Origin: Lepidodermella squamata
Taxonomy: Eukaryota > Animalia > Gastrotricha
NCBI GenBank assembly: GCA_047495785.1
Contig: JBLDXI010000048.1
Span: 496,001 to 560,000, forward strand
Reading direction: 5' to 3'
DNA: 64,000 bases
Positions 11,706-33,620 of this stretch are shown here, piece by piece. The notes beneath the pieces were generated by a model that was not told the DNA's origin, searched no databases, and worked only from the letters and a program-made list of their open reading frames with translations. The position numbers and the translations under genes are program-made. Each line of letters begins with the position of its first letter. Within the stretch, counting starts at the first letter, position 1.

Positions 11706-13131
11706 ATGGCTTACAGTAACTTGAATGAGTCAACTAGCGAACTACAAGCGCTGACCAACGAAGACGAGAACGATGCAACTATCGTATCGAATGACAGCCG
11801 GCGTTCCCGTCAGTTCAAGGCGTACAACGAACGCTGGTACATTCTCGTTGTCTTCTCCATTATCAACATCGCTCAAACCGGTGTTTACAACACTTTCGGC
11901 CCTATTGCCTCCACATCGGTGCTTGCCTTCAATTTGACGCAAACAGACGTCGCCCTTCTTCCGAATTGGGCCAATATTGTTTACTTCATTTCAATCGGCC
12001 CGTTTGTCTACCTTATCCAAAACAAAGGTCTAAGACTTTCCGTGGTGCTAACCGCAGCTTTTGTCTGGGCTGGAACTGCAGTAAGACTGCTGCATTTCGG
12101 AGATAATTACCGCGTTTTCTTGCATCTCGGTCAATTCTTGAACAGCATTGCTGGACCGGTTACATTTTTCGCATGCACAGCTGTTAGTTCGGTGTGGTTT
12201 CCAGTTTCGGAGCGGACTTTGGCCACAAGTATCTCGATGCTAACAGCCAATATTGGATCTGGGCTTTCATTTGTGATGGGACCTCTTATTGTAAATTGGT
12301 ACGATTAAATCTCATGAATATTTCGCAAATTATTGAATTTTTTTCAAATTTAGGTTTGCTACTGATTTGAAAGATGCGGGTGCAGTTCGACAAGGCATTG
12401 TATCTCTGTTAACAATTCAGTTCCTCTTCGCCTCATTCATCGTCATCATGACAATTTTTTCATTCCGATCGAAACCACCCACGCCGCCGTCGTTCACCGC
12501 AACCGCCGAGCGAACGTCAATAAAACCCGCGTTAATTTCGGTACTAACAAACCGAGACGCGTGGTTTCTAGTCCTCGTCTACTCGATTTCATCCGGCATG
12601 TGGGGCGGCTGGTTGGCGATCTTGTCCTGGGTAATTCGGTCGAGAGTCGATGAAATCGAAGCCGGTTGGCTTGGGCTAGCTTCTCAATTATCAGGTGCAA
12701 TTGGCGGTATCTTAATCTCAGCATTCGCGTCGAAATTTCAGTCAAAATCAAAACTTTTCGTTATAATCACGTATTTAATGTGCTGCATTTTGGTAACGTG
12801 GAACGTTGTTACCTTCAACTACGCGACTAATTACTACTCGCGATACGGCCTCTGGTTTTGCGTGATTGTTATTTCCGCGTTTTTAAACGCCGGCCAGCCG
12901 CTAATTTGGGAGTCGTGCTGTGAATTGGCATTCCCCGCGCCCGAGTCTGTCGTATCCGCGGTTTTATCCACTGGGAATTCGTTCGTTTCAGCTGTTTTGT
13001 TGATAATTGCCATGGCCCCATCGCTCGGCACCGAATGGATGGACTGGACCTTGGTTGTCACGTTTTGGCTATGCGTACCGATGATTTTGTTATACCGGCC
13101 TGTTCAACGGAGATCTGCGTTAGATCTGTAG
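11706..13131 (+). CDS. SLC49A4: MFS transporter, SLC49 family (SLC49A4/DIRC2-like). Exons 11706-12298, 12354-13131
   Basis: YNERWYIL...YNTFGPI, SSVWFPVSERTLATSI and KPPTPPS motifs of the FLVCR/DIRC2 family; many hydrophobic helices; a 55-nt GT-AG intron restores the frame (GPLIVNW|FATD). Confidence 0.85.
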
Positions 13132-13841: not shown

Positions 13842-16344
13842 ATGACTCGCCATTCCAGAAATGCGACAGCCAATCCGTGTTACACTTATCACGAGCGTAG
13901 AAAAGACTCTAAAGAATCCGGCTACGGCTCGCAAACAAAGCGCCTGAGTAAGGACGCTGTTCGCCCGGCCGATTGCTGCGCAATGACCCTACAGCCAGCG
14001 AAAGAGCCCGTCGTCACGCCGGACGGCTTTCTCTACGACCGATCGGCTATCATCGAGTACATGTGCCACGAAAAGGAGCAGATTGCGTTGCGTTTGAAGC
14101 AGTGGAAACAGCGCAAGGAACAAATTGAAGAGGCGAAGAAGAAAAAGGAGGAAAATCAGAAGCGGCTGGACGCGGAGAAATTTGCGGCCGGCGAGCGGCA
14201 TGTTGTTTCAGCGTCGTCTCGAGCGAACTCTAAGGTCAAGGTCCAAGCGCCGCCCAACAGCAGTCAGAACAGCTTTTGGGTTCCAGGCAAGGCTAAAATT
14301 CCAGGTAAAATGTTTGGCTTTTTTTATTTTCATCGAATATTAACATTCATGGGCTTGCAAAATTTCGTAATTACTAATGCGCATTTTTAATTTAAAAATA
14401 AATTTTAATTTAATTTTTTTTGGCTTTCTATGGGAGACTGTTGATAAAATTTGTTATAAGTGGTGAGAAAATACTGCAGCTCAACTTTTAAAATTAAAAT
14501 TAAAACTTAGATGAAGGTATACTTGATTAAAAAAAAATTTAAAAATTTCTTGGAAAATTTGAAAAATTGAAAAATAGTTGCGCAACTCATCGGAAACGCT
14601 TTACAAGTTACCGCACTTATTTAAACTCGAAATTAGAAAACCAGGCCAACAATCATTCTGAAATGATACGCAGCCCGGCGGAATGCTTTGAAGGATCAAG
14701 TTTTTTGGTCGGCCAAAGTAGAAGTTGAGCTCTTGTACTGAGCAATGATGAACTTGATCGCTGCAATTTTTCGATCCAACTGTGGGTTAGGCCAGCCCAG
14801 ATTTTGCTAGTTCTGTCAGTTCGAGCTTACTCTTAACAGACGCGATTTCATCGACCAGAAGTCGGACTACATTCCGAAAGCTTACACCGCCAGCTTGCAG
14901 TTTAACCTTTGATGCCAGGATTCGGCCAACTTGTTTCTTCGCACGTCTCGCGGAAATATTGGACAAAGTCGGCGAGAACCGATTTTGAAATAGTTTAGGT
15001 TGAGCTCTAATGCTCAGCCGCAGCCTTGAAAATCCAAGGGTAGAAACGGTAGAGCCATAAATCTGCGTATCAGTGTTCGAAATCCTGAGATTCCGCGATA
15101 GCATGCAATGAGGCCGTGCTCGTGGATCCACTTGGTAATGGCCTGAGTAAAATGGAAATGACATCCGACGATTCTCAAATACTTCCCATCTCGACCGACT
15201 TCAGCGCCGCTATTAAACCCGTTTCAAAGTCACAAGTAGCTTTTTCGGCGAAAAGAGGCTCTTCAACCCCGATAAATTACTCAAATGCTATGCTAAGTTC
15301 AGAATGGTTCCTGGGGCAGGGCAGGTTGGGTTTACACTTTGAGTGAACCTATTTTATTTATTGTTTATTTGGCCTTTGTCCCCGAATAAACGCGACTTGG
15401 AGACCCTCAGCATTATGAGGCTTCAGGTGCCACCTCTCTTCTGTGCTTACAAATTTCGCTTGGCTGAATCTTCTCTCAGATTCTGATGACACAGCGGCAG
15501 TGAGAAAAAGCTGGCGTGCGATCTTGGTCGAGGTCGGGTACTTTGGGCTCAATGACTTCCAGTAGAATAGCGGGTGGTAATTGTATCCTTCTGGGAGTCT
15601 TCAGATCGATAAGCGGCTAATTCGAATTTGATTTGCCCTTCAGTGAGGCTGAGACGTAAACCACTATATTTCGGATTGGACTTATTCGCAAGAATCTGTT
15701 GCCCAGTTCTTGGAAACCTTGATACTGAAAATTTGAAAGAAACGTTCCGGATCAGAATAATTGGCCCGCTCTGAAATCTGAATTTCGAATCTAGAAATGT
15801 TAGATTTTAGGGATTTTAGAAATAAATTGAATAAAATCTGTATTTAAATGTGATTTTATTTATAACATATAATTGATTAATTCCAGGTGACTCTGCCGAA
15901 TCGTTGGCTGAGGACACAATGCCACCAAAGCCCGAAGAAGTCGTAAAATGCCCAATGTCACACAAACCGCTCAAACTCAAAGACCTGCTACCCGTTCACT
16001 TTAAACGAGCCCGCAAAGAAGAAAACGCAGCAGCTTCTACCTCGTCATTTCTCTCCCTTGAAAGTGGCGACTACGTTTGTGCTATAACCGGCGATGTGTT
16101 GACCAATTCGCAGCAATTAGCTGTTTTACGGCCGTCTGGGGCTGTTGTCCTGCAATCAGCGGCTGATAAAGTGTTAAAATTTGACGAGAAATCGGGCGAA
16201 GTCGTCATGGATCCGGTTGCGAATAAGCCGTTGGAGGGCATCATCTCGCTGAAACGTGGCGGTTCTGGCTTTGTGGCGGCGACTGGCGGCGATCTGACGC
16301 AGATCCAGGCCACCCTGAAATTGCCCGTTCTTTCAATTTCTTGA
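13842..16344 (+). CDS. NOSIP: Nitric oxide synthase-interacting protein (split RING/U-box-like). Exons 13842-14304, 15887-16344
   Basis: Diagnostic N-terminus MTRHSRNATANPCYTYHERRKD..GYGSQ..RLSKD, CCAMTLQP..PVVTPDGFLYD, SFWVP, CPMS.KPLKLKDL, LKRGGSGF. Phase-1 intron. AATAAA near 16394. Confidence 0.95.
14640..15640 (-). mobile_element. Degraded hAT transposon remnant in the NOSIP intron
   Basis: About 15358-15575 (-) reads YWKSLSPKYPTSTKIARQLFLTAAVSSESERRFSQA, matching the hAT C-terminal dimerisation domain. Frame is broken; outer limits approximate. Confidence 0.7.
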
Positions 16345-17265: not shown

Positions 17266-17592
17266 ATGTTCTGCAAAATCGTTGTTGCTGTTTTTCTGGC
17301 AAGCGTTCTCACCCCACAAGCGGTCGCTGAGTTCAAGCCAGCAATAAACGAGGAGTGTAAAGGCTACTATTCGGCACGCAAGGTATCGAACGTTCCGACC
17401 TGCGTAGCTCTTTGTGATCAAGACACGAAGTGCGCAGGCTACCGTTATGCCTTCAACTTTGGCAAAGGGCAACAAGATACTTGCTACATGTCAAACAAGG
17501 ATCAGTGCGCAACACTGGTTACGCCGAAGAAATACGGCGGCCAGACGCATTTGAAGGGAGCATCGTGGCTTACACAGATTCAAAAAGGTTGA
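17266..17592 (+). CDS. Small secreted Cys-rich protein with a PAN/apple-like domain (108 aa, single coding exon)
   Basis: Signal peptide MFCKIVVAVFLASVLTPQAVA; core C-x3-C-x5-C-x-G-Y...C-Y spacing typical of PAN modules; ATTAAA near 17683. Confidence 0.65.
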   Translation: MFCKIVVAVFLASVLTPQAVAEFKPAINEECKGYYSARKVSNVPTCVALCDQDTKCAGYRYAFNFGKGQQDTCYMSNKDQCATLVTPKKYGGQTHLKGASWLTQIQKG

Positions 17593-17820: not shown

Positions 17821-18160
17821 TAAGCGCCGAAGTTGATGCCGTAGAATACTGAAGTCAGTGGTTTCTTCTGTGGAGGAGCCAACGGTGCCTAGGCTGTGTT
17901 GTCTGTATTATCATCAGCTTCCGGAAAAGTTGAAGCTGTCTAGAATCAATTAATTTTCTTTGCTAGCTGATAATTTTTAGGAGTGCTACTTGCAGAAAGG
18001 TTATTTTAGGTTTCTTTATTTCGATGCCTCTCAGGAGCCATGGTTTTCTCTGAAATCACATCACCCTGGCATGAGGTGTAGCTTCCAACCCGAGCCCGAT
18101 GATATTTTGCATTCTATTTTATTTGAAGTAGATCTTAATTAGTTAGTTGTGATTATTTAT

Positions 18161-21100
18161 ATGGGAAAGCATGCAGCTACTGGGTGTGATGGGCAAAGCG
18201 ATGTTCCGGCCCCATTAGCTCCTGAAGAAATCGCCAGGCGCGTTGCCGAGGCAACAAAAGGATCCGCATTTGACAAGCGAAAAGCCGAGAAACAGGCGAA
18301 TATTGCGAACCGAGTTGCTGAAATGAAGCGGCGGCTTACGAGCACTTCGCCGCAAGAGCGAGAGCGGTTCCGGTTACTGGCCGAGAAAGCCGTGCAGGAT
18401 GCGGAGAAGTCGCGAAATCTCAGCCGAGTCATGGTTCACGTCGATATGGACGCATTCTACGCATCGGTTGAAATACGCGATCAGCCAGATTTGGCAGGTA
18501 AATTGATTGATAAAACATACAGTATTACAGAGTTGGGCAAATATTTATTATTTGCTATCTGGTGATTTTTCGGGTCATATTGCCACTATTTGGGGCATTG
18601 TCTTGTACTTATTACAGAGGTGCAATTTGTTCTTGGTGGTCATTATTAAGCTAATACCATATTATTGTTTCTGAACTCTAAAAATCGTGATCAAATTGGG
18701 CTATTTGTTTTCTCCGAGCCAGGCAGTTAGTTAATCCAATCCGGCAATCCGGAACCGTAAAGTCTTCAATTCGATCAGGTCTATAAGCTGATATGAGCAA
18801 CTTCCAAAGGCTTGCCATCTGGACTACCCACATTGTATGTGCAAAAGGGATTCCCCACTTGGTACATTTCCTTTAATGAGGCTTGGGCTTCGTCATTGTT
18901 TTGCAGCAACTCCAAAGCATTGAAAGTAACCAACTGGCTATGCAATAGCGCCGTTCCCTTCGCGATGTCAATCGCCAAAATAATTGAGGTCATGTACTTT
19001 TGATTGCATGGTATCGAAAATCTACTTCGAACTTGGGATATCTATAGTTATGATTAACTATTCTTGGCGTCGGCATCTCCTCGTGCGATTTGTGATTTTT
19101 CCATTGCGATAATATCATGCTGCAGGGTCCATCGCATCGGGTTCGGCGAAGGCGGAGAAATCCAATGCTTCATTGGGTTTTCTGAGCGCAGTTCCGATCA
19201 AGAATTTCTAAAATGAAAATAGTTGATGAAAAGGCTTCACCTAGAAGAATTAATCTTACCGCGAGTTTGGCATCCGTTCTTTGCCCTACTCTCGTAGCAA
19301 GCTGTATTCTTCAAACCATTTTGGGCAAAAAGGATAGGTTTGAATTACTCTTCGAGAAAAATCGAATTATTACATATCAAATACAATGGTTATTTCAGCT
19401 AACGATTTCGAGAAGTTTTCTAAGTATTTTTTCCGCTGAGCTTGTTCCCGCCCGTTGCTTGTTTCTTTGTTCGCATCCTCGGCGATCAATTTCTGTTTCG
19501 ACTGAGACGCGCTCTGTGTCGAAGACGGCGCACTTTAATCAGCCTTCCTCTTTCCTCCTTGACTTGAAAGGATGATGTTTGTCTCGTAAGCAGACCCTCC
19601 GAACCCGATCCGCGTACCGCACCTTGCTACTAGATGACCCAGAAGCTTTTTTCTTCTTTGTTTGTTGTCCGAAGTAGAGCCTCTTCTTTTTGCCCGCTTT
19701 CAGCAGAAGAATTCAGCAAAAGGCTTTGTAACGGAAACGTCCAAGAAATCATAGGTATGAAATGATATTTAAATCGAAGAATAGTCTTGCCCTAGGCTGT
19801 GGTCGTAAAGTTTGAGCACGTAGGCCTTCATTTTTGTAGAAGGGCCGCCTTCAGCGCCGGTGACTTTTTCGGTGGCATCGGTGGTCACGCTTCACATTGA
19901 CTCGCCATTGGCCATTTCGAAGTTGAATCGGAAGTTGCCAAGATCTTGGAAACTTCCGTGTCAGTTATCGCTTGTATTATACTTCGTGAACTGAAGTATA
20001 ATACAAAGAAGATGAAGACAATCCCCTGATAATTTAACATACTGTATCTGCTGCACCAAAACAAACCCGGATCTGGCACGCAACTGCCTTTCTTTTTTAT
20101 TCGGATATGCGTACCATCAATAATGCTAACAATTCCTGGAATCTTTGAAAAGCTTCCTGAGCCAGGTCGTCAGCCTCAGAGAAACTGTGTAGTGCAATAA
20201 GATGTTTCAAGTTTGAGACTACGGCTGATATCTTAACTCTAACTGCTTTGCAACCTGTTGTTCGATGAAGTCCAAGTTCATCACCTTGACAGCGCTGCGA
20301 AGGTGCTCAGGTCAAGTACAGTATATTATCGTTATAGTGATAGCCGTTTATAGTGAACTATCGCTGCAGTGAACGATTTTGCTGGCACGCGGCTCAAAGT
20401 GACCTATTTACCTTATAATAGCTATCGGTATTGTGAACGACGCATATAGTGAACAATCGTCATTGTAAACGCTTTTTGCGGCGCATGCGCCATATAAAAC
20501 ACGTGTTTAGCGAGCGATATAATGAACGAGACTAAATTTTGAAAAATAAATTCTTCAAAAACGATTTCAAAAATTTGATGAACCGTAAAAAGACATGAAA
20601 ATCGTTCTCAAGCTTCCAAAATGGGGGAATCTCGAGCGTAGTAAGGGTCTCAAGCGCAATTTCGCACGGTTCAAATGGGCTAGCAGTTGTCACGGTTCGA
20701 GGCCCACCCCTTGAAGAAGCTTCAAGGAGCGGGCCCCGAGCTGTTGGCGACTATCAGAACTGTTCAAACGACTATTACTGATTACTTTTCACTTAAGAAT
20801 CAGATTTTTCTATTATATATACGCCGCCGATGCATTTAGCAGTAATATTCGGAGTTTTGAAGCCATATAAGCGTTTTCTTTTTCAACTATCACTATAGTG
20901 GAATTTCGTTATAGTGAACAAACTTGATGGCACGACCAGCGTTCACTATATTGAAAATATACTGTAACCAACGTTAGCCAAATTAATTTGCTAAGAGAGT
21001 TGCTTCTACTGGGTTTTATTGGTTTTATGTAGATGAGGACGCAGCTGTTCTTCAAGTTCGACGATTGCACGTTTGGAAAATTTATAGCGAGCGAAAAATT

Positions 21101-24100
21101 CGTTTGGCGAATTCATCAGAGTGAACTCGAAAAACTCGGTTTCTTTTAGGAAAGCGATTCATTCGTAAATATCAAAATGAATCATGGGCTGAATACAAGA
21201 GCTGAGAAAGCTTCTTGTATTGTAGCATCTCAACGATTGATTTCTTTCTTGTAGAGCTAAATGAGAGCTAACTAAGCCAGCTTCGCCAACTATTTTGGCT
21301 GCTGTCTCCCATGCAGCTTTTTCTTTATTTTGCACATTTGCAACAGTTTAGTGCTACTGAATTTATTTAAACTAGTATTGATCGATCAAACAAACTGAAA
21401 TTATTTCCATTTCATAGATAAGCCTGTCGCGGTGGGCGGCAATTCAATGCTATCGACGACGAATTACATCGCTCGCAGTTACGGCTGTCGCAGTGCGATG
21501 CCGGGATTCGTCGCTAAGAAATTATGCCCGCACCTGGTCATCATTCGACCAGATTTCCGCAAATACTCGGCTGTTGCCAAACAAGTCCGTGAGGTTTTCG
21601 CCGAGTACTGCCCTGATTACGTAACAGGTGGGTTGGACGAGGCTTACCTTGATTTGACTGAATACCTAGAATCTCGGCTGACTGGCAAAACGAGTAATCA
21701 AATTGCTGATTTTAAAATTTCGGACGAACTATCGAGTCGTGTTGGCTGCAAATGCGACGAGGCGGAAATTGAGTCTTCCCAGCCGGTGGAGAAGGCGGAC
21801 TTCAAATACTGTCCGAAATGCAAGTTACTCAGGTAAGCCAAGTTACACAGTTGCCACCCGCAATCCTATCACTGATAGCGAAGTCAGCTGCAAGTAAAAT
21901 CTCAAGAAATTTACTTCGAAATTGAACCAAAATGTACTTCGATGCTCTAGTTCTTAAGCCAGACGTCAGTTCCAACTGTTGAATCCTGTAATTGACATAG
22001 GCCACGCTACGAGTAAAAGCCGCAGCGCGGCTATTTAGATTAGGGATAAGAGCGGCAAGGAAGCCGTTCCAATCCGCGACCCTAGGTGCCCTATATTCGG
22101 CACGCCTTTATTCGACCTTCACATATAGTCACCACACTCCCACTTCCGCTGCCCCATCGACATCAATTGATACCGATTATGTCCTGCAATTTAGCGACGG
22201 TATGAATGAATATACACCGGCTTCGTAAAGAGGCCGGCCAACATTTCCTCGGTGAATAACTTGCGTGGATTCTCGACCAATCGCATATCGAAAAAAGACT
22301 CATGCGGATAGAATCGTGTATCAACTGTCTAATAATATATCTAATTTGCTTCGTGCGCCTGCCCGCGCCCTGAAGGACCGAGTCTGATATCACGCAGGCC
22401 TGATTGTCACAAAACACGACAGCAGTCTTCGGCACGTTGCGGGATAGCTCGGCCAGGACCCCAGCGAGCCCATTCACTTTGAGAACAATATCGGATAAGG
22501 CAATGAGCGAAGAAAGAGCGAGAGCGGGTGCATTGTTTCGATCATGTTTTAGTCGATCACATGTTTCTCTACAGCACGGATATACAATGAGAATTGCAAA
22601 TTTGTCAGTCGCAAGAATCGAGATTATGATTTTTCAGGCTTTCAAATGTCATTTTCGTAGTTTTTCGCATGACAATTTCTATAGCTGTCAAGCGAATAAG
22701 AGGACTGCTTTTCTATCAGAAACATTACAGATCATACGTTGCTTTTGTTCAACCGCAAGAATGATGTTAAGGCACGTTTTTGATGACTAATGGCTCAAAT
22801 GATAAGATCGATGAGTAACAAACTAGCGATAGTAGCATTATTTTTATTCCACGCGGCTAAGGCGTCTATATCCTTTCGGGTTTTGTGGAAGGTGAAGGAA
22901 GGCAAAATTTAAGAAAAATCACCCCCTCAGTTAGCAATTTGCTTTTACCATAAAATTCATCATCCATCATCTCTATATTTAATGCCGTTAATTCTGTGGC
23001 GTGTCAGTCCACGTCTTCTACTATTATTTCAATCGAGGTTGACTTGGGTCGTCCTCGAGAGCGTCGGTTCTTTCGATTTCAGTAGCAACGACGTTAATTA
23101 CATCGTCCTTCACCTCCGCGATTATGCTATCACGAAACAGCGGCCAGTTGTGCTGATCTAGCAGGGTTTCAATGCAATTTTCTACAGCTTCGTCGATCGT
23201 ACCTCGAGCATCTTCTAGATGATACTCGATTTTATTCGCTATTCGATCCTCCGCCTATAAAATTGACTAAATTAATAACCTGCGTTTTTTTAATTTTTTC
23301 ACTCACCTCATCAACAATTCGGTCAACAATGGCCAATTGATCTTCGGTGAGCGGACTTGACGGTCGGCGAAAGCTGGTTTTCGGGGCTGTTAGCGTTTCA
23401 GGAAGACGCCTCTTCGGCAACTGATTTCCCTAATTTTAAAGAAGTAAATCATAAAATTTGTAAATATCCTTAGGTGGGCTTTCTTCGCAGCACCCGTAGT
23501 TGACTTAGAGCAGCGTTTTCACAATTCGATTTAAAATTCTACACGAAACATTGATCAGGTTTCTACGGCCATCCCATCGAACTGGATGAAAAAAACGAAG
23601 TTATATAATCATTGAATCTCAGCTATTTTCATGGTAGCTTTCACTTGAAGCTTTCACCAAGTTCCTTCTTGCTTCTTGCCTCTTTGCTTCTTCGGCCTAT
23701 AATAAGAAAAATTCCAAATATCAGACTAGAATGTGATGTTGAGAATTTGTGAAACGATAGCAGTTCGATAGTAGCTTCGCGAATGGTGGCGTCGATTGCG
23801 TTGGGAAGATCATCTAGGCAAGACCCCTTGAAGCGCGGGTCCAATAGGCTGGCGATTCGCACGAAATCGTCAGCCATTAGCTCCGAGAAGCTCCGAGTCC
23901 AGGGCCGTCAGGATCGCTTTCTTCGTTCCCGTGACACCGAAATGCGGTGCCGTTAAGTATGCTTCGCAGCACTTGGAATAGAGTCGGGTAGAGTCCTGGG
24001 GCGCCCGGAGGATTTTGCGAATGTAATTGAATCGAAATCCGTTTTGTATTGTGTCTTTCGCAGCCTTTCATTCTAGGACAACACATATCGTTTTTTTATG

Positions 24101-27100
24101 GCCGCGATCATCCAGATCGGAGCTCCGTCAAAGTGAAGTTGCGATCTCAATAAGCAGATTGAATAGCATCTCTTCATGCGGTCATCTCGGACCAATTCAG
24201 AAAGACAACGGAGAAAAATATTTCACCATGTTTCTGAGCGACAATTCAGAAATTTTTTATTAACTGAGCGACAAGAATTTTTATTAACTAAAATAACATC
24301 TTAAAGTGACCTTGCGTGACCATCGAATCTCCACTGCAGTGCATGACTTTCTCATGCAGGAAAAGGGCATGGCTTACGCCCTTTACACGCGATATGCAAC
24401 ACCTTGTAGGAGTGAGATCCTTCCATTGGAATTTCTCAGCCTTTCATCCCAGGACTGCAGATATCGTCTTTATCTGGGCGTGATCATCCAAAACTTGTCT
24501 TGCTGTTCATGGGCCTGAATCGATTCTCTCAGTTTCTTTGCCAGCTCCTTGTTCGTTACCTTCCCTTTGCACTTGGTCGATTTTTCCAAGGCATATGTAT
24601 CCGACGTTATATTGGCGAGAATTTCGGAATCTGTTTCGACAAATCCGCCTTATTTCGTGACAGGCTTTGCAGATGTGTAGAGTATAGAAATATGGAAGAA
24701 ACATGCAATTAGGCACGCTGTATATAAAAAGGACAGGTCTGACAAGTTCATTTTTTATTATTCGATCATAATCAACGTTGTAGCTGTGAAGAAGTTCATT
24801 ATCTGCTTCTTAAGGGGAAAGAATCGGAATGTCTTTTTACAACCATTAAAAAAATGTATCAGCGATGCTTAGATTTATCAACAATTCTTTGAACTTTGTT
24901 AAGGAAATTTCGATTTCTACGTTTCGATTTCTAACAGAAATCATCTTCAGGGAGATAAAGTTGAATGGTCTAGGCTTGAAATTATAATAAAAATCTTAAG
25001 GCGAATATTTTAAATTGATAAAACCCATTTTTCATGATAAATGAAAGCGTATAATCAAGTAGAAAAATTAGCCGAAATTATCTAAATCTTCAGTCTTCAT
25101 AATCAATTTTAAATATCCGCCTCAAGATTTTAATCATAATTTTAAGCCTAGAACATTTAACACTCCCTGAAGATGATTTCTGTTAGAAATCGAAACGTTG
25201 GTTACCACAAAAACTGTTAGCGCTAAATTTCCTTAACGGAGTTTGCACTAAAAACTTGTTATCAAGATTCTTTGAACCAATGAAAAAATCGATTTTGTGA
25301 ACAACTCTTTGTTCAAGTCGTGTATACCCACATTCCGAAAAATCGAAATGTTTCAAAATACGGACTGCACATTGTTATTGGTAGCTAGGTCTTTCGGAAG
25401 GAAAAAATAATTCTTGTAGACGGGGGAACCACGTGAATAGTGGTCGGCCAACGCGAACGATTAGCTGGCCAACAAGCTAAGTATAAACGAATGCCAGCGT
25501 GCTTAGACGCCGGATGGCTTGTTGAATGCTTTCATTTTGTGGCTAGTAACCCCATAGTTTGCACTGAGAAGCAATCATCCTGCAGATTGGCTTTGCATTA
25601 AGTGGAACAGACAACCGCGAATCGTGACTTGGTAAACCTCACAAATGGCCCTTCGCGATGCTTGCTCGAAAGCGGCGATTAGACTCTCAGGCCGTAGACC
25701 TGCGAAACGCGGGCGCAATTGTTGAACCAATACAGAATGGGTTTCGTTAAGCCTGTTCGGGAGAAGGCAATAAATGGCCGTAATGGCTTTCACTCGCCGC
25801 TCGCCATTTTGAAAGGTTTCAACGTAGATATGCATCGTGAATAGTTGGTGGAGTCCAGCTGGAGATCTATTTTTATAAATTATCAAATTTAGTGTTGCAA
25901 ATTATTATCGAATAATCAGAAATTTGAATGATTTTTTAAAATAATTGTTCATTGTAGATGTCAAGTTGGCAACGAAATAACGTTCGGAAACACGGCCTGG
26001 GCAGTTGTCGAAGAAATCCGCTTCAAAATCCTGCTCTCAACCCGGCTGACGAGTTCAGCCGGAATCGCGCCAAACACAATGATCGCTAAAATCGCCTCAG
26101 ATCTACGCAAACCAAACGGCCAGTTCATGATCCGCCCGGAACGGGACGAAATTCTGAACCTGATGAAAAATATGGCTGTCTCGAAAATCCCCGGCGTCGG
26201 CCCGGTGAGCCAGGGCGAATTGGCTGGTCTCGATATCAAAACGTGCGGCGATTTGCTGGAACGACTCGGCGATATTTTGCAGCTATTTTCCGACCTTCAC
26301 TTCTCATTCCTACTCCACGCGTGTCTCGGCATGGGTTCGACCCATTTGGAACACGGTGGGCCGAGAAAATCGCTAGGAACTGAGACCACCTTTGAAAAAA
26401 CGTGTGATATGGCTAAATTATTGCCAATTATCAAAGAATTATGCGAGGAAGTTGCGGAGTCGATTGAGGAGGAGCAATTGCTGGGTCGAACCCTAACGTT
26501 GAAAATTAAAACTGCAGATTTCAAAAATTTCACCCGCGCCGGATCTTGTCCGGGTAAAAATGCGTGTTTTCGGCCGGATTCAAAGGGCCAAGATATGTTT
26601 CAAGTCGCGAAGCAACTGTTGGAAAAAGAATTTGCGGATAATGGCGGAAAGTTATGGATCCGCCTTCTCGGTGTTCGATTATCGAATTTGAAGGAAATTT
26701 CAGAAATCGAAGAATCGAGTTCGATTTCGACGCTTTTAACGAAAAATAAACGCAAAAGTGATGAAGTTCAGGAAAATTCGAAAAAATCGAAAAAATTGAG
26801 TTCTGAACCTGAATGCGTTGAAGAAATTTCCCTGATTGACGACGTGATTTTCGACGAAAATTCTTCGTCGAATGTTGAAGAAAATTCCGAGTCTTACGTT
26901 TGCCCGATTTGCAATGCGAAATTGCCGAAAATTACGTTGGTAAAATTTAACCAGCACATCGACGAGTGCCTCAATCGATCTGCTATTCGATCTCTCAAAG
27001 AAGAAGATGAATTAATTCGAGGCGTTGAAAGTCAAGCTGGGCCATCGACTTCAAAAATTCAGCGCAAAATCTCGAACAGCAATAATCGAAAATCGAATTC

Positions 27101-27161
27101 GCCGCCTGGGAAGTCGAACAACGCTCAGAAAAGCATTTTAAATTTTCTCAAACGTCAATGA
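18161..27161 (+). CDS. POLK: DNA polymerase kappa (Y-family, DinB). Exons 18161-18497, 21418-21832, 25958-27161
   Basis: N-clasp (EATKGSAF), VHVDMDAFYASVE, STTNYIARSYG.RSAMPGF, LDEAYLD, SAGIAPN.MIAKIASD..KPNGQ, little finger (RLLGVRLS), one UBZ4 (CPIC...FNQHIDECL) and a C-terminal PIP box QKSILNFL. Splice phases consistent. Confidence 0.95.
20020..21130 (-). mobile_element. PIF/Harbinger transposase relic, interrupted by a MITE, in POLK intron 1
   Basis: Minus-strand peptides EFFARYKFSKRAIVELEEQL, GDELGLHRTT.CKAV (HTH-like), IPGIVSIIDGTHIRI (first catalytic D of DDE_Tnp_4) and LNYQGIV; frameshifted. Confidence 0.75.
20319..20964. mobile_element. Tc1/mariner(pogo)-type MITE with TA target duplication
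   Basis: TA|CAGTATATT...TATAGTGA and TCACTATA...AATATACTG|TA termini; repeated subterminal ATAGTGAAC-like motifs. Confidence 0.8.
21977..22480 (-). mobile_element. Ty1/copia retrotransposon 3' fragment (RNase H end, polypurine tract, putative 160-bp LTR at 21977-22136)
   Basis: VFCDNQACV...RRTKQIRYIIRQLI and, in a shifted frame, TEEMLAGLFTKP (copia RNase H); then GGAAGTGGGAG followed by TGTGG...TCAACA containing AATAAA. Confidence 0.7.
23641..24720 (-). mobile_element. Degraded hAT-like transposase remnant in POLK intron 2
   Basis: IASLLDPRFK motif near 23820-23860; surrounding frames are broken and the limits are approximate. Confidence 0.5.
24898..25237. repeat. Foldback/MITE-like long inverted repeat
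   Basis: Perfect 36-bp arms at 24919-24954 and 25163-25198, outer arms GTTAAGGAAATTT/AAATTTCCTTAAC, and further degenerate pairing inward. Confidence 0.85.
25575..25886 (-). mobile_element. MULE (Mutator-like) transposase fragment
   Basis: HQLFTMH...AIYCLLPNR...FEQASRRAI..VY..TIRGCLFHLMQS is the MULE core; the catalytic D of the DFE motif is lost. Confidence 0.75.
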
Positions 27162-27292
27162 CCAATTTTTGTTTGTCTCATTTTTTGCGTCGTGTTTTAT
27201 TGCTCATTTTTTCAAATATAAGTTGCTATGTGATTTTATTCGTACTAAATATCCAATTTTTGTCTCGATTTTATTAGGCATTTTCGATAAAA
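27162..27292 (+). promoter_or_regulatory. 131-nt T-rich POLK-RPAP1 spacer with an unpaired 3' splice acceptor (AG at 27276-27277); candidate SL trans-splice site
   Basis: TTTTGTCTCGATTTTATTAG lies 15 nt upstream of the RPAP1 ATG. No convincing donor in the spacer and little room for a promoter. Function is inferred. Confidence 0.5.
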
Positions 27293-30200
27293 ATGATAAA
27301 AAGGCCCTCGGCGAAAGATACCGAAGAAGATTTGTTGCGGTTCCAAGAAGAATATCTAGCGAGTATTGGCAAGAAACCTGACCAGTCGAAACGAGTCGTC
27401 AAGGGCGAACCGGCGGCTACTGTTTTCAAAAAAGCTAATGGTGAGATGCGATATTTTATGCGCGGTTAACAAGAGTCAGGCTGGTTAGAAAAATTATCTG
27501 ACCTTATCTTATTTGCTATGAAAAAGCTCGTTTTATTTCTGGCATTGACCTTTCTGAAAGGTTCTACTTCACCTCAATATTATTCCACTGGAATCCAACC
27601 AGGTTCGAGTTTAACTCAGTTGCTACTCTGAGCAAAAAATTCAATTATCCGCTAATTATCCCCTTCGAATACAACGCACAATTAGACAAAACGACCTTAT
27701 TTTCTAAGTTTCCACCTCATTTCGAAGACTATCTAAATATAATAAGAGTTTGATTAGTATCGGAGACGTAGATTTCAGGAGGCGTGTAATTGCGTGTAAC
27801 TGTCAACATCGCCCCAAAGTGTTAGTCGAAAAGTCGTGCAAGGCCGTCAGCCGTCCGCTCCTGGTACTTCTTTCCCTGTAAAAATGTGCAAGTACTTGGG
27901 AGACACACATTGAGTTGATCGAATTTCGCGTTAGAGAGAGTATGTGTGTGTATGTGTCGAGCTTTCAGATGTAGTGAGTCTGTTGTCTGCTCTAACTAGA
28001 GCAAACACGACGAATATCTAAAAAATTGCGATAAAATCACCAATTGATGAATAAATTCGCGGAAACGTTGGACTGCGTTTTTGGACGAATCAGTTGAAAT
28101 CAAACTGCTCCAAGTGAGGCAATGCGATTTGTTGTACTTCTCAATTCTCAATTAATTGTGATTTTCTGCCTCGCGTCAATGGGTAGTTCGGATGAAAACT
28201 CGGATTCCAACAGTCTGATAGGGTTGTTTTCACACATTAATTAAACTCTGAGTCGAGATGAAAGGTGAATACGATGTTGGGCGAAGCAGCTACGGGTTTT
28301 ATTTATGAAATTGGTTAATATTGGTACATATCGGCGCTTAGATTCCAAGGGATAGCGTCATACAGAGAAGACCAAAGCTAACAAATCGGGATTCGGGCTT
28401 CGAAAAAATCCTTAAAATTCGTATAGACCCGAGGAGTGCTAAAATCACAAATAATTGTTGTCTGTAGTTTTATTTTTTTGTGAAATTGTTAATGAGAAGC
28501 TAAAAGGCTGGAATAAGGCAAAATGAGGTGTTGGAGAGCTTTAACGGTTAACCTTGATTCGTACAAATCAGCTTGATGGAACTGTCAGTATTATGTCGCA
28601 AGGACATTCCACGGTCGAGGGAGGAGGTTCTTGACTGCTTTCACAAAATCATCGCGGCTGTTGAAAAACGCACCAATAAGTTGAGAAATAGCGTTTCTGG
28701 CGGTTTTAGTAGATGCTATGAGAGCGTTGAAAAATTCCAAATGACAGCCTGAACTTGCCAGATGGCCGGGATATATGCCGCTCAGCGACAGGCGCTTTCA
28801 ACTACACAATGGGTGCTATCGTAAACTTCAGAGGAAAAAATACGAGTTTCTGTATTTGAAATTTATTTCAAAATTTTCTCAATTTATTGTGATTTTCTTT
28901 CATTTTTATAGCTGCGAGCTCAAGCCGACCTGTTGATCAAGACAGCGATAAAGAGGAAGACGATGATAGCAGCGATCCAGCGTGGTTCCCTCTGTCAGCC
29001 GCCAGATCAGGAATAACTGCCGTGCTAGGCGAAATCGTCGAACGGCCATTCGACCCGTCCAAAGTTACATCGCTAAATTTTCAAGCGACAAGCGGCTTTT
29101 CAACGCTTGAAATATTTCAACTGAGTAAAACTGAAATGAACGCGAAACCGGTGCGAGGCATGAGTTTATTCGCAAGGCAGATGCTGGCGAAGAATAAACC
29201 AGCAGTCGAAGAGCCTAAAAATGACGAAAATATCTCAGAAATTGTTGAAGATAAAAAGGTGGAAGAATCTAAAATTTCGCCGAAATTACTGTCGGAAATC
29301 GATCGAGAAAATTGCGAAAAATTGGCCAAGATGAGCCGCGATGAAATCGAAGCTGATCGCGAGGAGTTATCGCAAGTTCTACCGAAAAATTTGGTTGAAT
29401 TCTTGAAAAATCGGAAAAAGCCAAATACAGCTGCGCCAACTGCTTCGGCGGATAATGAGCCGCAATTGAATGATAAAAATGGATCGAAATCAGCGGTGCC
29501 TGATGATTTGCCGGTGAAACCTGATCCGAAATGGGTGCATATGGATAATGTCGAGGCGGACAAGCTCGAGTGGACGAGAGATGTGCCGATAAATGGTAAA
29601 TTTTGGCCTATTTTTTTGGTAAATTCTCAGTGTGGCAAACAATTCAAAAAATTGCGAAGATATTTTGAATTTTCAAATTTTTTTAAATTGAAAACCAAAT
29701 CATTTTCTGCAATAAGCTCCCAGAATTTCATTGTTCCGATATGAACATTCTAAAACCCACAATTTTGTCGGTACCTTCTACCAGGTTTTTAATCGAAATC
29801 TAGATTTCTAAGAATTGGTCGATATAGCGAAGCATCGGAAAATGAAGAATGCAAGCTTGAACCTTAGTTCTAATTATGAAAATACAGTATGTGAGCAAAA
29901 TGTTCGGCTCACTCCTCAAATCAGGACTTTCTGATAATTTTTAGAATAATTATCTCCGGTTCAATATTCATCGATTATCGATCATCGAATCGGATATTGA
30001 TTTTTATTGGTAGAGGTGATTGATTCTAGGAATATCGATTGGACTAGGCCTCGAGAAATTTTTCGAGCAACTTTAGTGAAGGCATAATGAAACCAGGAAA
30101 ATTTAGTATTTTCGACCTCTTCTAGCGGACAAATCAAGGAACAATCGAATAATCCTCAAAATCGATAATCGATAAAATCGATGAAGCACTGTGCCAAAAA

Positions 30201-33200
30201 TTTTGCTCACATACTGAATTCATACCCATTGTTTTAATTATAATCGATGATTTTTTCTATTTTGATTTTAGCTTCGGCAAACAAGGAGTTGCAAGCCTTC
30301 GAAACGCGGTTCGATTTTGCGGGTGAAATCGCTCCAATTCCAGCCGCAATTCTAACCAACAACGACCCTGACGTGCCGCCTGTCGAACTGCCGCCCACCT
30401 CATCCGGCCTGTACCACCACGGCGAAGAGCCAGACCGGCCTGGTTACACGCTGTCCGAACTGTTGGAACTCGCGAGATCGACCAATGTCCAGCAACGAGT
30501 TTTAGCCCTGCGGACTTTGAGTGAAATTTGTAGAAAGGCGAGGAGAGGCCATTACGTAGCGGCAGGGCTTGATAAGCCAATAATTCCGTGTTTGCTAGAG
30601 GCAGGTCTGGGCTTTGTGATACGAGTCGCTCTGGACGATTCCAATTCAGAAAACAACGCCCTAGCAGCTCTAACTGCCCTTCACAGCTTTTTAATCGAAA
30701 AATCGGACGATTTGTTGCTGGAAAATTATTTTTCCAGTAATTCTCGGGCGAATTTCCCATATTTTGCCAGTCAAATAATTCCGAATCCGACAAGTGATGA
30801 ATCATTGAAAAAGTTGAATGACGGCGATTTGATGGCGAAAGACGTTATTTTAGCGCTGGTTTTTCGCACGAATTTGATCGCAAGGTTGAGGTATATTCTT
30901 TGCGATTGGCCGATTCCGTTGGGCCAGGAGGAAATTCGTGAAAAAATCCTGGAAATTCTGCTGAGAATCGCCCGCCATTCGCCGAGTTGCGCGGCTCAAA
31001 TTGCGAATAATCAACGAATTTTGGCGAAAATTTCGTCGCCGGATTTTGTGAAACTTGAGCCGAAAAGTCTGGAATTGTTAGCGACAATCGCTATTTCCTC
31101 GCCAAATGTGATTTCATCGAATTTTGAACTGAACAGAATTCATGGATTTTTGTCCGAATTGAGGCCGAATTCGAGTGGTTTTAATCTGGCAAGCGGTTAC
31201 ATTCGACTTTTAACCAGTTATTGCATTGGCAATGTTAAAGGAGCGAAAGATGCGATTTTAGCGCTGAGCCAGCATTTTGTCGAGCTGGAAACAGTTGTTT
31301 TATCGAGGTCTGAATCGATTCCACCGCCGGAGATTTACGCATTTTACTCATCAATTTTGCAACTTTTCTCATCGTTGAAAATTGACGATGAGTCGTTCGA
31401 TTTTGAAGGGCCGATTTTTGGCCTCCTCGAGCCGATTTTTGTCATTTTCCCAGCTAAATTTATCGATTGGCTGAAAAACCATTCAACCGAATCTTTGGTA
31501 AATTTCCTTTCGTCAGCCTACCATCTAGCTGGTTCGAAACCAAAAATCGCCGAAAAATTACCGATATCGGTAAAATTTATCGAATTAACAGATTTCGTGA
31601 TGAAAAAATCGATCGAGGAATCGGTTAGTCATTCCGATCGATCGATAATTTTGCGATCTTTCGAATTCAAAAATTCGAAAAATGAAAGCCCCAATTCTCT
31701 GCAATACTTGAATTTGCTCTCAGAAAATGTGCCATGTTCATATTGGGCACTGGCAGGGTCGATATTCGAGTTTTTAGCCTCGGCTCAAAATGATAGAGTG
31801 AAATCGATTTTAGTCGAAAATTTGACAAGTACTGATATCGTGAAGTATCTCAATTCAATCGCGTCGAAAAAATCGCCGGCTGGGTTTGCGACTTCCTACT
31901 TTCATTTGGTTTTGGAGGCGAAATTTTTCGTCAATTTCATCTCTGCTGTTACGAATTTTATGGAAAAAATCGACGAAAAATCTATTTTCGGAGCGTTAGT
32001 CAAAATCTTGCCGCTAGTTCCGAGTTTGTTCTCGAACTTGGTTTGGGACGTGATTTTCGACGGATTTTTGTTCAATCCGAAAATCATCGGCTCCGACTTG
32101 CATGGCTTCCAATCAGTTCGTAGCGTCTATCGCGATGCTTTGTCGGTTTTACTCCAAAATCCTGGTTCAACCTCGTTTTCCTGCCCGGCGCTGTGCAAAG
32201 ATTGGCTGTACTTCCCGTTAGCAGCCGCTGGCATCACGATCTCGCTACAACCGCCCAGCCCTGGTCAAGGCTCGGAAAATGAGCCCGATTTAACGATGCC
32301 GGCTGTTCGGCATCGCGTTGTAGTCGCCGTGTTGCGATTTGTGCGTTTCATGTTGCGAAAAAACGCGACGGTTTTATTTCAAGAATTGACGCCAATAACG
32401 CATTTTGTGCGGCTGGCGGCGTTGTACCTGAACGATGACGTGTTTGGCGGGGCGGCGGGCGAGTTGGAGGGCGTTCGTGGCATGTTGGCCGATTGTTTGA
32501 CGCTCGTCCTCAAAAGCAGTGCCAACGCGTTGAATTTCGCTGAAAAAGTGCCCGGCCTCGACTGCACGCTTGCTGATTTGTAAGTTGAACGAAGTTACTC
32601 GAGATTTTTTTATATAATTTTACTAGCATTTACTAGCACTAAGCACTAATCGTAGGATTTTGCAAAGAAATAGCGATCGATTTAAAGAAAAATTGTAGCT
32701 AATTTCTTATTTTAGACACCTTCTTTTTCGCTTCATTTGGCTCAATTCACAACACGGATTTATGACTATAAACTTTGTTTAATTGTTTTCATTCCGTAGT
32801 TACATCGCACTTCTGGAACAGTTCAAAGCGTCGTCTTATGGGGACTCCGTTTTCGGCAACATATTGCTGCTCTTTTCCGGCGCTGTGCAGCCAGTTGTCT
32901 TCCGCCGACTTCTCTGGGGCGACCACCGGGAAGTGCTCACATTTCTGCGGCACATCAAGCGTGACCAGCTGCTGTTCGATCTCGACAAATTGCTGCAGCC
33001 ATTCGAAAGCAACATCCATGTAGTTAAACAGCTCGCCGAGTTCACTTTCAGTGAATTGATGAACGCCCACTCGACCGTGACGGCCGACTCGGTTCTGTGG
33101 ATTGTCGCCATCAATCACCTGAATTCATTCCTATTCGACTCATCGGGCCACTCGTCCGGTCAGCTGCTACGGAAATCAATGTGGCAAGCGCTAGTTGAGC

Positions 33201-33400
33201 AGATCGATGACCAAAAATCCGGGAATTTAGCGGCGAAACGCGCGAAAATCGCCCAGCTTGTGTTTTACCGATATTCGATATCAAGTGATCACATTCAGTT
33301 GTATGAAACATTGCCCCAGAACCGTTTGGTGTTTTTGAAATCTCTCATCGGTGATGAGGCGAAATTTCAATCGTTTTTAATGACTCTTATGCAGAAATAA
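27293..33400 (+). CDS. RPAP1: RNA polymerase II-associated protein 1. Exons 27293-27440, 28912-29595, 30272-32579, 32800-33400
   Basis: Exon 1, missed by the ORF track, reads MIKRPSAKDTEEDLLRFQEEYL. RPAP1_N (EIDRENCEKLAKMS..EI), KLEWTRD, RFDFAG, RPAP1_C (GLYHHGEEPDRPGYTLSELLELARST..QQR), DWLYFPL, SYGDSVF. Phases consistent. Confidence 0.93.
29885..30216. mobile_element. Tc1/mariner-type MITE in RPAP1 intron 2
   Basis: Perfect 16-bp TIR CAGTATGTGAGCAAAA / TTTTGCTCACATACTG; TA on the left, AA on the right. Confidence 0.8.
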
Positions 33401-33620
33401 TATTCTCGATTGTTGAAAATAAAATGGATTTTTGTTTCTTCTTCTTTGAGCTTCGAGGGGTTGTTCGAGAAGATTCCACTCAAGTCACCTATTGCAGTGA
33501 GCCGAATGCCAGAATAACGAATATATTATGATTAGAGTTCGTATTTGCACATGTCGAGCCACTATGTAACATCACTGAGCTCCATTGCAAAATGGCCTCA
33601 GGTCGTGGGGCTCAACATTA

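What the first reader, a model, noticed from the sequence alone, without database searches (positions are those of the whole stretch)
27121..27440. Candidate animal operon: POLK and RPAP1 separated by 131 nt with an unpaired splice acceptor
Seen: the POLK stop ends at 27161, and a small RPAP1 first exon absent from the ORF track (MIKRPSAKDTEEDLLRFQEEYL) starts at 27293 on the same strand. The spacer is T-rich, has no AATAAA (only AATATA/ACTAAA variants), and ends in TTTTATTAG 15 nt before the ATG with no convincing donor. Established: about 100-nt intercistronic spacers resolved by spliced-leader trans-splicing occur in nematodes, tunicates and flatworms. Inference: a translesion polymerase and a Pol II assembly factor are co-transcribed. 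I do not recall this pairing being described.
Basis: partly seen in the sequence, partly recalled or inferred. Interest (0 to 1): 0.8.

Follow-up and report, generated by a model that had tools for sequence, protein, structure and literature searches.

The report
Probable POLK-RPAP1 trans-spliced operon junction
Two unrelated housekeeping genes, a DNA-damage-bypass polymerase and an RNA polymerase II assembly factor, lie 131 bases apart in a small invertebrate; they look like one operon cut apart by adding a shared leader RNA, but the RNA proof is missing.

Summary
POLK ends at 27161. A genuine RPAP1 first exon starts at 27293, and RNA contigs show it spliced to exon 2. The 131-nt spacer has no AATAAA and ends in a strong splice acceptor (AG at 27276-27277).

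Four new results favour the operon reading:
- The genome carries about 540 copies each of two spliced-leader-type RNA genes in its rDNA spacer.
- A diverged second copy of the locus (contig C31) differs from the spacer by 1 substitution in 129 bases. Third codon positions differ at 13% and flanking introns at 10%.
- In a distant relative (about 40-65% protein identity) the order MFS > NOSIP > POLK > RPAP1 is kept on one strand. Its spacers are 77, 62 and 88 nt. Each has an acceptor 22-23 nt before the ATG, and two have a canonical poly(A) signal.
- By a strict rule, such an acceptor lies 10-40 nt upstream of only 1.7% of non-coding positions.

Not shown: a leader on RPAP1 mRNA, or a transcript spanning both genes. 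The only RNA run probably has no coverage between 27217 and 27318.

My estimate is about 0.55 for a true SL-resolved operon. It would be a new member of a known kind. Earlier notes of this scan report many similar clusters elsewhere in this genome.

The parts
11706..13131 (+). MFS transporter gene (two exons), first gene of the conserved same-strand cluster
   Evidence: Pfam MFS_1. Orthologue in relative L073 at 702-2078, 52-61% identity.
13842..16344 (+). NOSIP gene. An acceptor CTATTTTAG ends 22-23 nt before its ATG.
   Evidence: Pfam zf-NOSIP. Sequence. Passes the strict acceptor rule in both species. 60-62% identity to the L073 gene.
18161..27161 (+). POLK gene: exons 18161-18497, about 21432-21832, and 25958-27161. 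The introns are long and TE-bearing (a MULE fragment lies on the minus strand at 25575-25886).
   Evidence: Pfam IMS, IMS_C, IMS_HHH. An RNA contig joins 21832 to 25958. tblastn with the L073 POLK. Top hits are named DNA polymerase kappa.
27159..27161 (+). POLK stop codon TGA
27162..27292 (+). 131-nt intercistronic spacer, T-rich and under purifying selection
   Evidence: 1 substitution in 129 aligned bases plus 2 indel events against the C31 copy. Third codon positions show 59/448 and introns 64/624 (Fisher p = 4e-6 and 9e-5).
27215..27220 (+). AATATA, the likeliest poly(A) signal variant for POLK. The C31 copy reads AATAAG at the same place. It could alternatively be read as a TATA-like ATATAAG.
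   Evidence: Sequence. An RNA contig covers the POLK 3' UTR at least to 27216. Inference only.
27230..27241 (+). GU/U-rich stretch GTGATTTTATTC: a possible downstream element of the POLK poly(A) site. Its first six bases are also the only donor-like GT in the spacer (GTGATT).
   Evidence: Sequence. Inference.
27243..27249 (+). Branch-point-like TACTAAA, 29 nt before the acceptor AG
   Evidence: Sequence. Identical in the C31 copy.
27255..27277 (+). Polypyrimidine tract and acceptor (..TTTTTGTCTCGATTTTATTAG). Proposed trans-splice site between 27277 and 27278.
   Evidence: Passes the strict acceptor rule, which is met upstream of only 1.7% of background positions. 100% identical in the C31 copy.
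27278..27292 (+). 15-nt genomic part of the RPAP1 5' UTR, if the acceptor is used
   Evidence: Sequence
27293..27440 (+). RPAP1 exon 1 (49 codons + 1 nt), donor GTGAGA at 27441
   Evidence: The RNA contig runs from 27440 into the first 13 nt of exon 2. N-terminal motif RP..TEEDLLRFQEE is conserved in homologues. The 9 differences from the C31 copy are all at third codon positions.
28912..29595 (+). RPAP1 exon 2 (RPAP1_N)
   Evidence: Pfam. RNA joint 29595|30272 with GT..AG.
30272..32579 (+). RPAP1 exon 3 (RPAP1_C)
   Evidence: Pfam. Donor GTAAGT at 32580.
32800..33400 (+). RPAP1 last exon (TPR_RPAP1), stop at 33398-33400, canonical AATAAA at 33417-33422
   Evidence: Pfam. Sequence.

Best explanation
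POLK and RPAP1 form the tight downstream junction of a conserved same-strand gene cluster (MFS > NOSIP > POLK > RPAP1). The junction most likely works as a spliced-leader-type operon.

Proposed mechanism. RNA polymerase II reads through from POLK into RPAP1. The POLK message is cleaved and polyadenylated a few tens of bases after its stop, with AATATA at 27215 as the signal variant and a GU/U-rich stretch at 27230-27241. The RPAP1 message gets its capped 5' end by trans-splicing of a roughly 30-nt leader onto the acceptor at 27277|27278, 15 nt before the ATG. The leader would come from SL-RNA genes in the rDNA spacer.

Shown: the gene identities, the exon structure, the 131-nt spacing, the acceptor, selection on the spacer, conserved linkage in a relative, and the presence of SL-RNA-type genes.

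Inferred: use of the acceptor for trans-splicing, the position of the poly(A) site, and co-transcription.
For: (1) Anatomy. The spacer is 131 nt with no canonical poly(A) signal. It contains TACTAAA, a pyrimidine tract and TTATTAG, ending 15 nt before an ATG that matches the N-terminal Met of RPAP1 homologues.

(2) The acceptor is not a chance feature. Only 1.7% of non-coding positions have one like it 10-40 nt upstream.

(3) Selection. The spacer differs from the C31 copy by 1 substitution in 129 bases. Third codon positions differ at 13% (p = 4e-6), flanking introns at 10% (p = 9e-5), and other intergenic flanks of the same region at 5-9%.

(4) Synteny. In a relative with 37-66% protein identity (L073/L079) the four genes keep order and strand. 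The spacers are 77, 62 and 88 nt, each with an acceptor AG 22-23 nt before the ATG. Canonical signals (AATAAA, ATTAAA) lie in the 62- and 88-nt spacers, 25-31 nt before the acceptor AG. No usable GT donor occurs in the 62- and 88-nt spacers, and only a poor one (GTTTCA) in the 77-nt spacer.

(5) SL machinery. The rDNA unit holds two SL-RNA-type genes. Each has a roughly 30-nt exon ending CTAAG or CTGAG, a GT donor, an Sm-like U-run and a 3' stem-loop. Each is present in about 540 copies.

(6) RNA. Both genes are expressed. The POLK 3' UTR is covered to at least 27216. Exon 1 of RPAP1 is spliced to exon 2.

(7) Leads, not tested here. Earlier notes of this scan report a leader seen on mRNAs at other clusters of this genome.
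Against: No read or contig shows a leader at 27278, and none bridges POLK and RPAP1. By depth arithmetic, the RNA run probably has no coverage from 27217 to 27318.

In this genome the other two junctions of the cluster are wide: 710 nt, and 1.8 kb with an inserted PAN-like gene. The cluster is therefore not one compact operon here, and internal promoters must exist or be tolerated.

NOSIP has the same kind of acceptor although it lies 710 nt from its neighbour. An acceptor thus speaks for trans-splicing, not by itself for co-transcription.

ATATAAG at 27216-27222 could be read as a TATA box 70 nt before the ATG.

POLK is not followed by RPAP1 in the two rotifer genomes checked.

That the SL-type genes really donate their exon to mRNAs was not verified by me.
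Confidence: 0.55

Rival explanations
1. The two genes are independent and merely packed tightly. RPAP1 has its own promoter overlapping the POLK 3' UTR or last exon, and its start site lies in 27217-27292. The acceptor is either unused or receives a leader after removal of a very short outron (monocistronic trans-splicing).
For: A TATA-like ATATAAG lies at 27216-27222, about 70 nt before the ATG. Strong conservation of the spacer fits a promoter as well as processing signals. NOSIP has the same acceptor architecture with 710 nt of upstream space. The other junctions of the cluster have expanded in this genome. RPAP1 is not linked to POLK in two rotifers.
Against: The TATA-like motif is the one place where the C31 copy differs (AAATAAG), while both versions stay one base away from AATAAA. 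In the relative the spacer is 88 nt, with ATTAAA 31 nt before the acceptor. The NOSIP>POLK spacer there is 62 nt, with AATAAA 25 nt before the acceptor. This leaves no room for a separate core promoter. Order and strand of four genes are kept at 37-66% protein identity.
Confidence: 0.28
2. The acceptor at 27277 is used in cis. One option is a 48-nt mini-intron in a 5' UTR (donor GTGATT at 27230). The other is a donor inside POLK, giving read-through or fusion transcripts rather than leader addition.
For: GTGATT at 27230 with TACTAAA and TTATTAG would make a formally complete 48-nt intron. Small introns of roughly 50-60 nt occur in this genome and in the relative.
Against: The donor is weak: it lacks G at +5 and is preceded by TAT. 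The homologous spacers in the relative contain no usable donor (29 nt or less to the AG). A transcript using this donor would still have to start inside the POLK 3' end. The RPAP1 ATG at 27293 matches the N-terminal Met of homologues, so no coding exon lies upstream.
Confidence: 0.1
3. The tandem arrangement and the acceptor-like motif are chance features of an AT-rich intergenic region and have no role.
For: T-rich spacers often contain TAG. No RNA evidence shows use of the site.
Against: The background rate of such an acceptor is 1.7%. The spacer is the most conserved non-coding stretch of the region. The linkage is conserved in a distant relative.
Confidence: 0.05

Closest known systems
Spliced-leader-resolved operons of chaetognaths and tunicates (Spadella/Paraspadella, Ciona, Oikopleura)
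   Same: Unrelated housekeeping genes lie on one strand. The poly(A) signal of the upstream gene is only tens of bases from the acceptor of the downstream gene. No operon-specific leader is needed. SL genes are said to be often located in rDNA clusters (PMC12460157; PMC2481426 reports 3 nt between the poly(A) site and the acceptor in Spadella). The relative's junctions (25-31 nt from signal to acceptor) look just like this.
   Different: The leaders of this genome (..TCGATTTTCGAATTCTAAG..ATTAAATTTTCTGAG) match none of the published chaetognath leaders read in PMC2481426 and no string in the paper library. Neither leader addition nor a polycistronic RNA is shown at this locus. In this genome the junction is 131 nt, and the rest of the cluster is spread out.
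Caenorhabditis elegans SL2-type operons
   Same: The intercistronic region is about 100 nt, between a 3'-end signal and a trans-splice acceptor, and it is U-rich. The genes are functionally unrelated housekeeping genes. Statements about C. elegans rest on established knowledge and PMC1657053.
   Different: There is no evidence for a specialised downstream leader. The nematode SL1/SL2 Rfam families did not match the rDNA unit that carries the two leader genes. Acceptors here are TAG-type rather than TTTCAG.
Rotifer SL trans-splicing (Pouchkina-Stantcheva and Tunnacliffe 2005, as cited in PMC3795323)
   Same: It concerns a small invertebrate with SL trans-splicing. Earlier notes of this scan suspect a rotifer-like or gastrotrich animal.
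   Different: The canonical 23-nt rotifer leader GGCTTATTACAACTTACCAAGAG is absent from this genome even with 3 mismatches. POLK is no closer to Adineta or Brachionus (33-34%) than to birds. POLK>RPAP1 linkage is absent in both rotifers. Operons had not been reported in rotifers as of PMC7986045.

Membership tests
SL trans-splicing-resolved animal operon | Two or more genes on the same strand with a very short intercistronic distance | tested here: met
   131 nt between the POLK stop and the RPAP1 ATG. 88 nt in the relative.
SL trans-splicing-resolved animal operon | The organism has SL RNA genes (leader exon, GT donor, Sm-type site, 3' stem-loop) | tested here: met
   Two such genes lie on the minus strand of the rDNA spacer of L006, each in about 540 copies. 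This holds at sequence level only. The fold z-scores are not significant, and the Sm-like site of the second gene varies between copies.
SL trans-splicing-resolved animal operon | The mRNA of the downstream gene carries the leader at an acceptor that has no cis donor | tested here: inconclusive
   The only reads call showed no contig between 27217 and 27318 and no leader. The one loose end, at 27319, is the SMART cDNA adapter.
SL trans-splicing-resolved animal operon | Co-transcription: a polycistronic precursor exists and the downstream gene has no own start site | not testable with these tools
   This needs raw stranded, long-read or 5'-end data.
SL trans-splicing-resolved animal operon | Linkage conserved between diverged species | tested here: met
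   MFS > NOSIP > POLK > RPAP1 is kept in L073/L079 at 37-66% protein identity. It is not kept in Adineta steineri or Brachionus calyciflorus.
DNA polymerase kappa (Y-family, POLK/DinB branch) | IMS catalytic core, little-finger IMS_C, HhH motif, C-terminal UBZ-type zinc finger and PIP-like tail | tested here: met
   Pfam IMS, IMS_C, IMS_HHH. All named top hits are DNA polymerase kappa. CPICNAKLP..HIDECL and the tail QKSILNFLKRQ are read from the ORF. Calling these a UBZ finger and a PIP-like tail is from my own knowledge.
RPAP1 (RNA polymerase II-associated protein 1) | RPAP1_N, RPAP1_C and TPR_RPAP1 domains in order, plus the conserved N-terminal RP..EEDLL.FQ motif | tested here: met
   Pfam. 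N-terminal alignment A2. Homologues found.

The most novel reading that the evidence does not exclude
MFS > NOSIP > POLK > RPAP1 is an ancient spliced-leader operon of an animal lineage in which operons have not been described. Earlier notes suggest a gastrotrich or a rotifer-like animal, and I found no paper on SL trans-splicing in gastrotrichs. The operon would be kept compact in a small-genome relative. In this larger genome it would be partly dissolved, with POLK>RPAP1 as the junction that is still co-transcribed. That would make the locus a natural before-and-after case of operon decay.
Probability: 0.4. Interest if true: 0.6.

Novelty: new member of a known kind. Interest (0 to 1): 0.4.

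Why it matters
If confirmed, this is a clean and cheaply testable example of an animal operon outside the classic model groups. It has an internal control: a second, 7-10% diverged copy of the locus in the same genome. It also has a compact-genome relative that keeps four genes in one run. Comparing the two species could show how operons loosen as genomes expand, since three tight junctions in the relative correspond to one here.

The particular pairing of a translesion polymerase with a Pol II assembly factor has no known functional logic and was not found in the literature. The interest lies in gene organisation, not in a new pathway.

On its own the locus adds little. Earlier notes of this scan already list many operon-like clusters in this genome.

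Tried and rejected
1. RNA evidence. The run search found only two holders, and the single reads call showed no leader and no bridging contig. The loose end TGCGTTGATACCACTGCTT at 27319 is the reverse complement of the SMART cDNA primer (my own knowledge of that primer). It is an artefact, not a leader. The end of the POLK 3' UTR contig at 27216 cannot be taken as the poly(A) site, because contigs of this run break about every 100-250 nt.

2. Known leaders. The canonical rotifer leader is absent from the genome. The chaetognath leaders do not match. Rfam found no SL family in the rDNA unit. No paper holds the two candidate leader strings.

3. Dispersed exact copies of the leaders outside rDNA. 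I had hoped these were retro-copied trans-spliced host mRNAs. They are joined to LINE-like 5' ends. They fix the exon borders of the leader but do not prove trans-splicing of host mRNAs.

4. Close relatives. The protein and contig tools hide this genome and its near kin, so no transcript of this species could be fetched. The metagenome scan gave one distant metatranscript only (L007). P0006/L078 has too little upstream sequence to test synteny. The full HMMER scan added no second relative species, because L079 and L080 carry the same protein as L073.

5. Taxon. It was not determined. POLK hits show no near named relative. Earlier notes disagree between rotifer and gastrotrich.

6. The fold of the SL-type genes is no better than that of shuffles.

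7. Spliced RPAP1 and POLK models were searched exon by exon only. The joined protein was not searched.
Full report
**Observation**

- The POLK reading frame ends with TGA at 27159-27161.
- The next ATG in a coding context is at 27293.
- The spacer 27162-27292 is 131 nt, T-rich, and lacks AATAAA and ATTAAA. It contains AATATA (27215-27220) and ACTAAA (27244-27249).
- It ends in TTTTATTAG (27269-27277), 15 nt before the ATG.

The upstream ORF has the little-finger and HhH domains of Y-family polymerases. Every named top hit is DNA polymerase kappa. With the exons at 18161-18497 and about 21432-21832 (IMS domain) it forms a complete three-exon POLK. An RNA contig joins 21832 to 25958.

The downstream exons carry RPAP1_N, RPAP1_C and TPR_RPAP1. 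The small exon 27293-27440 is genuine for three reasons:
- An RNA-type run has a contig that runs from 27440 straight into the first 13 bases of exon 2 at 28912.
- Its nine differences from a second genomic copy are all at third codon positions.
- Its peptide (MIKRPSAKDTEEDLLRFQEEYL...) aligns with the very N-terminus of RPAP1 from a close relative, two more distant contigs, and Drosophila.

The ATG at 27293 is therefore the start codon, and no coding exon lies upstream.

**The acceptor**

Upstream of the AG at 27276-27277 lie a pyrimidine tract and, 29 nt away, TACTAAA, a good branch-point match. I applied a strict rule: YAG, at least 11 of 15 pyrimidines, at least 8 T, and no AG in the 12 nt before. 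Only 1.7% of non-coding positions in this window have such an acceptor 10-40 nt upstream.

The ATG of RPAP1 has one at 15 nt. The ATG of NOSIP has one at 23 nt in both species. The spacer contains only one donor-like GT, GTGATT at 27230. It is weak, but it would make a formally complete 48-nt intron, so 'unpaired' is likely but not certain.

**Selection on the spacer**

The genome (121 Mb, 151 contigs) holds a second copy of the locus on contig C31. The copy is collinear with the window for at least 25 kb, at 80-97% identity. Both copies keep both genes intact and under purifying selection. POLK last-exon differences by codon position are 7, 5 and 50.

Differences between the two copies:

| Region | Differences | Comparison with spacer |
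|---|---|---|
| POLK-RPAP1 spacer | 1 substitution in 129, plus two small indels | - |
| Third codon positions | 59 of 448 | Fisher p = 4e-6 |
| Flanking introns | 64 of 624 | Fisher p = 9e-5 |
| Other intergenic flanks of the region | 5-9% | - |

The 76 nt before the ATG have no substitution at all. The spacer is thus functional sequence. This fits processing signals, but a promoter would also fit.

The only variable spot is the AATATA motif, which reads AATAAG in the other copy. Both versions are one base away from AATAAA. This favours a poly(A)-signal reading slightly over a TATA-box reading.

**Conserved linkage**

The best POLK hit (52% identity over the last exon) lies on an 8.6-kb metagenome contig, L073. 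The same species also appears in L079 and L080. On L073, all on one strand, lie:
- an MFS transporter;
- NOSIP (ATG at 2156);
- POLK (3124-5033);
- RPAP1 (ATG at 5122, peptide MIKRPSANETEEDLLRFQEEF...).

The window has the same four genes in the same order and orientation, at 37-66% protein identity.

Junctions in the two species:

| Junction | Relative: spacer | Relative: poly(A) signal | Window: spacer |
|---|---|---|---|
| MFS > NOSIP | 77 nt | none canonical | 710 nt |
| NOSIP > POLK | 62 nt | AATAAA, 25 nt before the acceptor AG | 1.8 kb, now containing a small PAN-like gene |
| POLK > RPAP1 | 88 nt | ATTAAA, 31 nt before the acceptor AG | 131 nt |

In the relative, each spacer has an acceptor AG 22-23 nt before the ATG. 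The 62- and 88-nt spacers contain no GT far enough upstream to serve as a donor; the 77-nt spacer has only a poor one (GTTTCA, directly after the stop). This is the layout of chaetognath, Ciona and Oikopleura operons, where the poly(A) site and the trans-splice site nearly touch (PMC2481426, PMC12460157).

In the window only the POLK>RPAP1 junction has stayed tight.

The linkage is not universal. In Adineta steineri, POLK is followed by a forkhead gene. In Brachionus calyciflorus it is followed by a phosphatase gene.

**Spliced-leader machinery**

The 8460-bp rDNA unit (L006) carries a 5S gene on the opposite strand. It also carries, on the minus strand of the spacer, two small genes with the anatomy of SL RNAs:
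- a leader of about 30 nt (..ATATCTGCGTATCGATTTTCGAATTCTAAG, and ..ATATCTGCGATTGAATATTAAATTTTCTGAG);
- directly followed by a GT donor (GTATGA, GTTAGT);
- then a U-rich Sm-like site and a 3' stem-loop.

Each leader occurs about 540 times in the genome. Copies outside rDNA are joined exactly at the exon's last base to LINE-like 5' ends, and they begin at about (A)ATATCTGCG. This fixes both borders of the leader exon. It does not prove that host mRNAs receive the leader.

The canonical rotifer leader is absent. Earlier notes of this scan state that a leader was seen on mRNAs at other clusters of this genome. I treat these as leads, because I could not repeat them.

**RNA evidence and its limits**

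One run (X1) behaves as RNA, covering exons only. It confirms the splice joints 21832|25958, 27440|28912 and 29595|30272, and it shows POLK 3' UTR coverage to at least 27216.

The depth figures are fully accounted for by three contigs: one ending at 27216, a short one from 27319, and one ending at 27440. Most likely nothing covers 27217-27318. The loose end at 27319 is a cDNA-adapter sequence.

The RNA therefore neither shows nor excludes a leader at 27278 or a bridging transcript.

**Verdict**

The most likely reading (about 0.55) is a spliced-leader-type operon junction. POLK would be polyadenylated some tens of bases after its stop, and RPAP1 would be capped by trans-splicing at 27278.

The main rival (about 0.28) is an RPAP1 promoter overlapping the POLK 3' end, with or without trans-splicing of a short outron. 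Cis-splicing into 27278 (about 0.1) and chance (about 0.05) are less likely.

The kind of system is known from nematodes, tunicates, flatworms and chaetognaths. This particular pairing was not found in the literature. The animal's phylum is undetermined. If it is a group without described operons, as some earlier notes suggest, the genome-wide phenomenon would be noteworthy. This single locus would still be only one of many candidates, valuable mainly for its conserved four-gene context and its in-genome second copy.

Noticed in passing
window 15138-40856 versus G000 contig C31:104000-129721 (loci L009-L012): A second, collinear copy of the whole region exists at 80-97% identity, with TE-sized indels in introns. 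Both copies keep POLK and RPAP1 intact. A DNA run (X2) holds both versions. It could be a diverged haplotype of an asexual lineage or a homeologous chromosome. Which one it is was not resolved.
   Followed up: partly
L006 (G000:C2:2905400-2914100), positions 4402-4520 and about 4690-5290: The 8460-bp rDNA unit carries a 5S gene on the opposite strand and two SL-RNA-type genes in the intergenic spacer. A repeated motif, ACCACATGCAC(G/A)TGGTCATTGGCGAC, occurs at 4551-4576 and 5078-5103 next to them.
   Followed up: partly
Loci L013-L072 (for example L018, L023, L050, L058): Exact copies of either leader outside rDNA are fused at the leader's last base to 5' ends of several LINE-like families (ORF starts such as MAQLNLETAEQFATL). 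The same families occur with either leader. Some rDNA copies of the second SL-type gene are interrupted shortly after the donor (L055, L064, L065, L071).
   Followed up: partly
window 17266-17592 (+): A small gene for a secreted PAN/apple-like protein (weak Pfam PAN_4/PAN_1) sits between NOSIP and POLK and is absent from the relative's cluster. Its CDS differs from the C31 copy at only 1 of 327 bases, while its flanks differ at about 5%.
   Followed up: no
window 25575-25886 (-): A MULE transposase fragment lies inside the 4.1-kb last intron of POLK. In the relative, the one intron between these exons is only about 30-50 nt.
   Followed up: no
window 19125-20289: A stretch inside a POLK intron is 97% identical between the two copies, well above the neighbouring intron sequence. 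It may be a young repeat or a gene-conversion tract.
   Followed up: no
window 29212/29342, 29546/30354, 30545/30640: The RNA run X1 shows opposite-strand joints inside RPAP1 exons and an adapter chimera at 27319. These are most likely artefacts of an amplified cDNA library.
   Followed up: no
window 18120-18160 and 13810-13841: POLK (TTTATTTGAAG, 32 nt before its ATG at 18161) and NOSIP (CTATTTTAG, 22-23 nt before its ATG) also have acceptor-like motifs just upstream of their start codons, despite long upstream spacers. This suggests that trans-splicing is not limited to tight junctions.
   Followed up: partly
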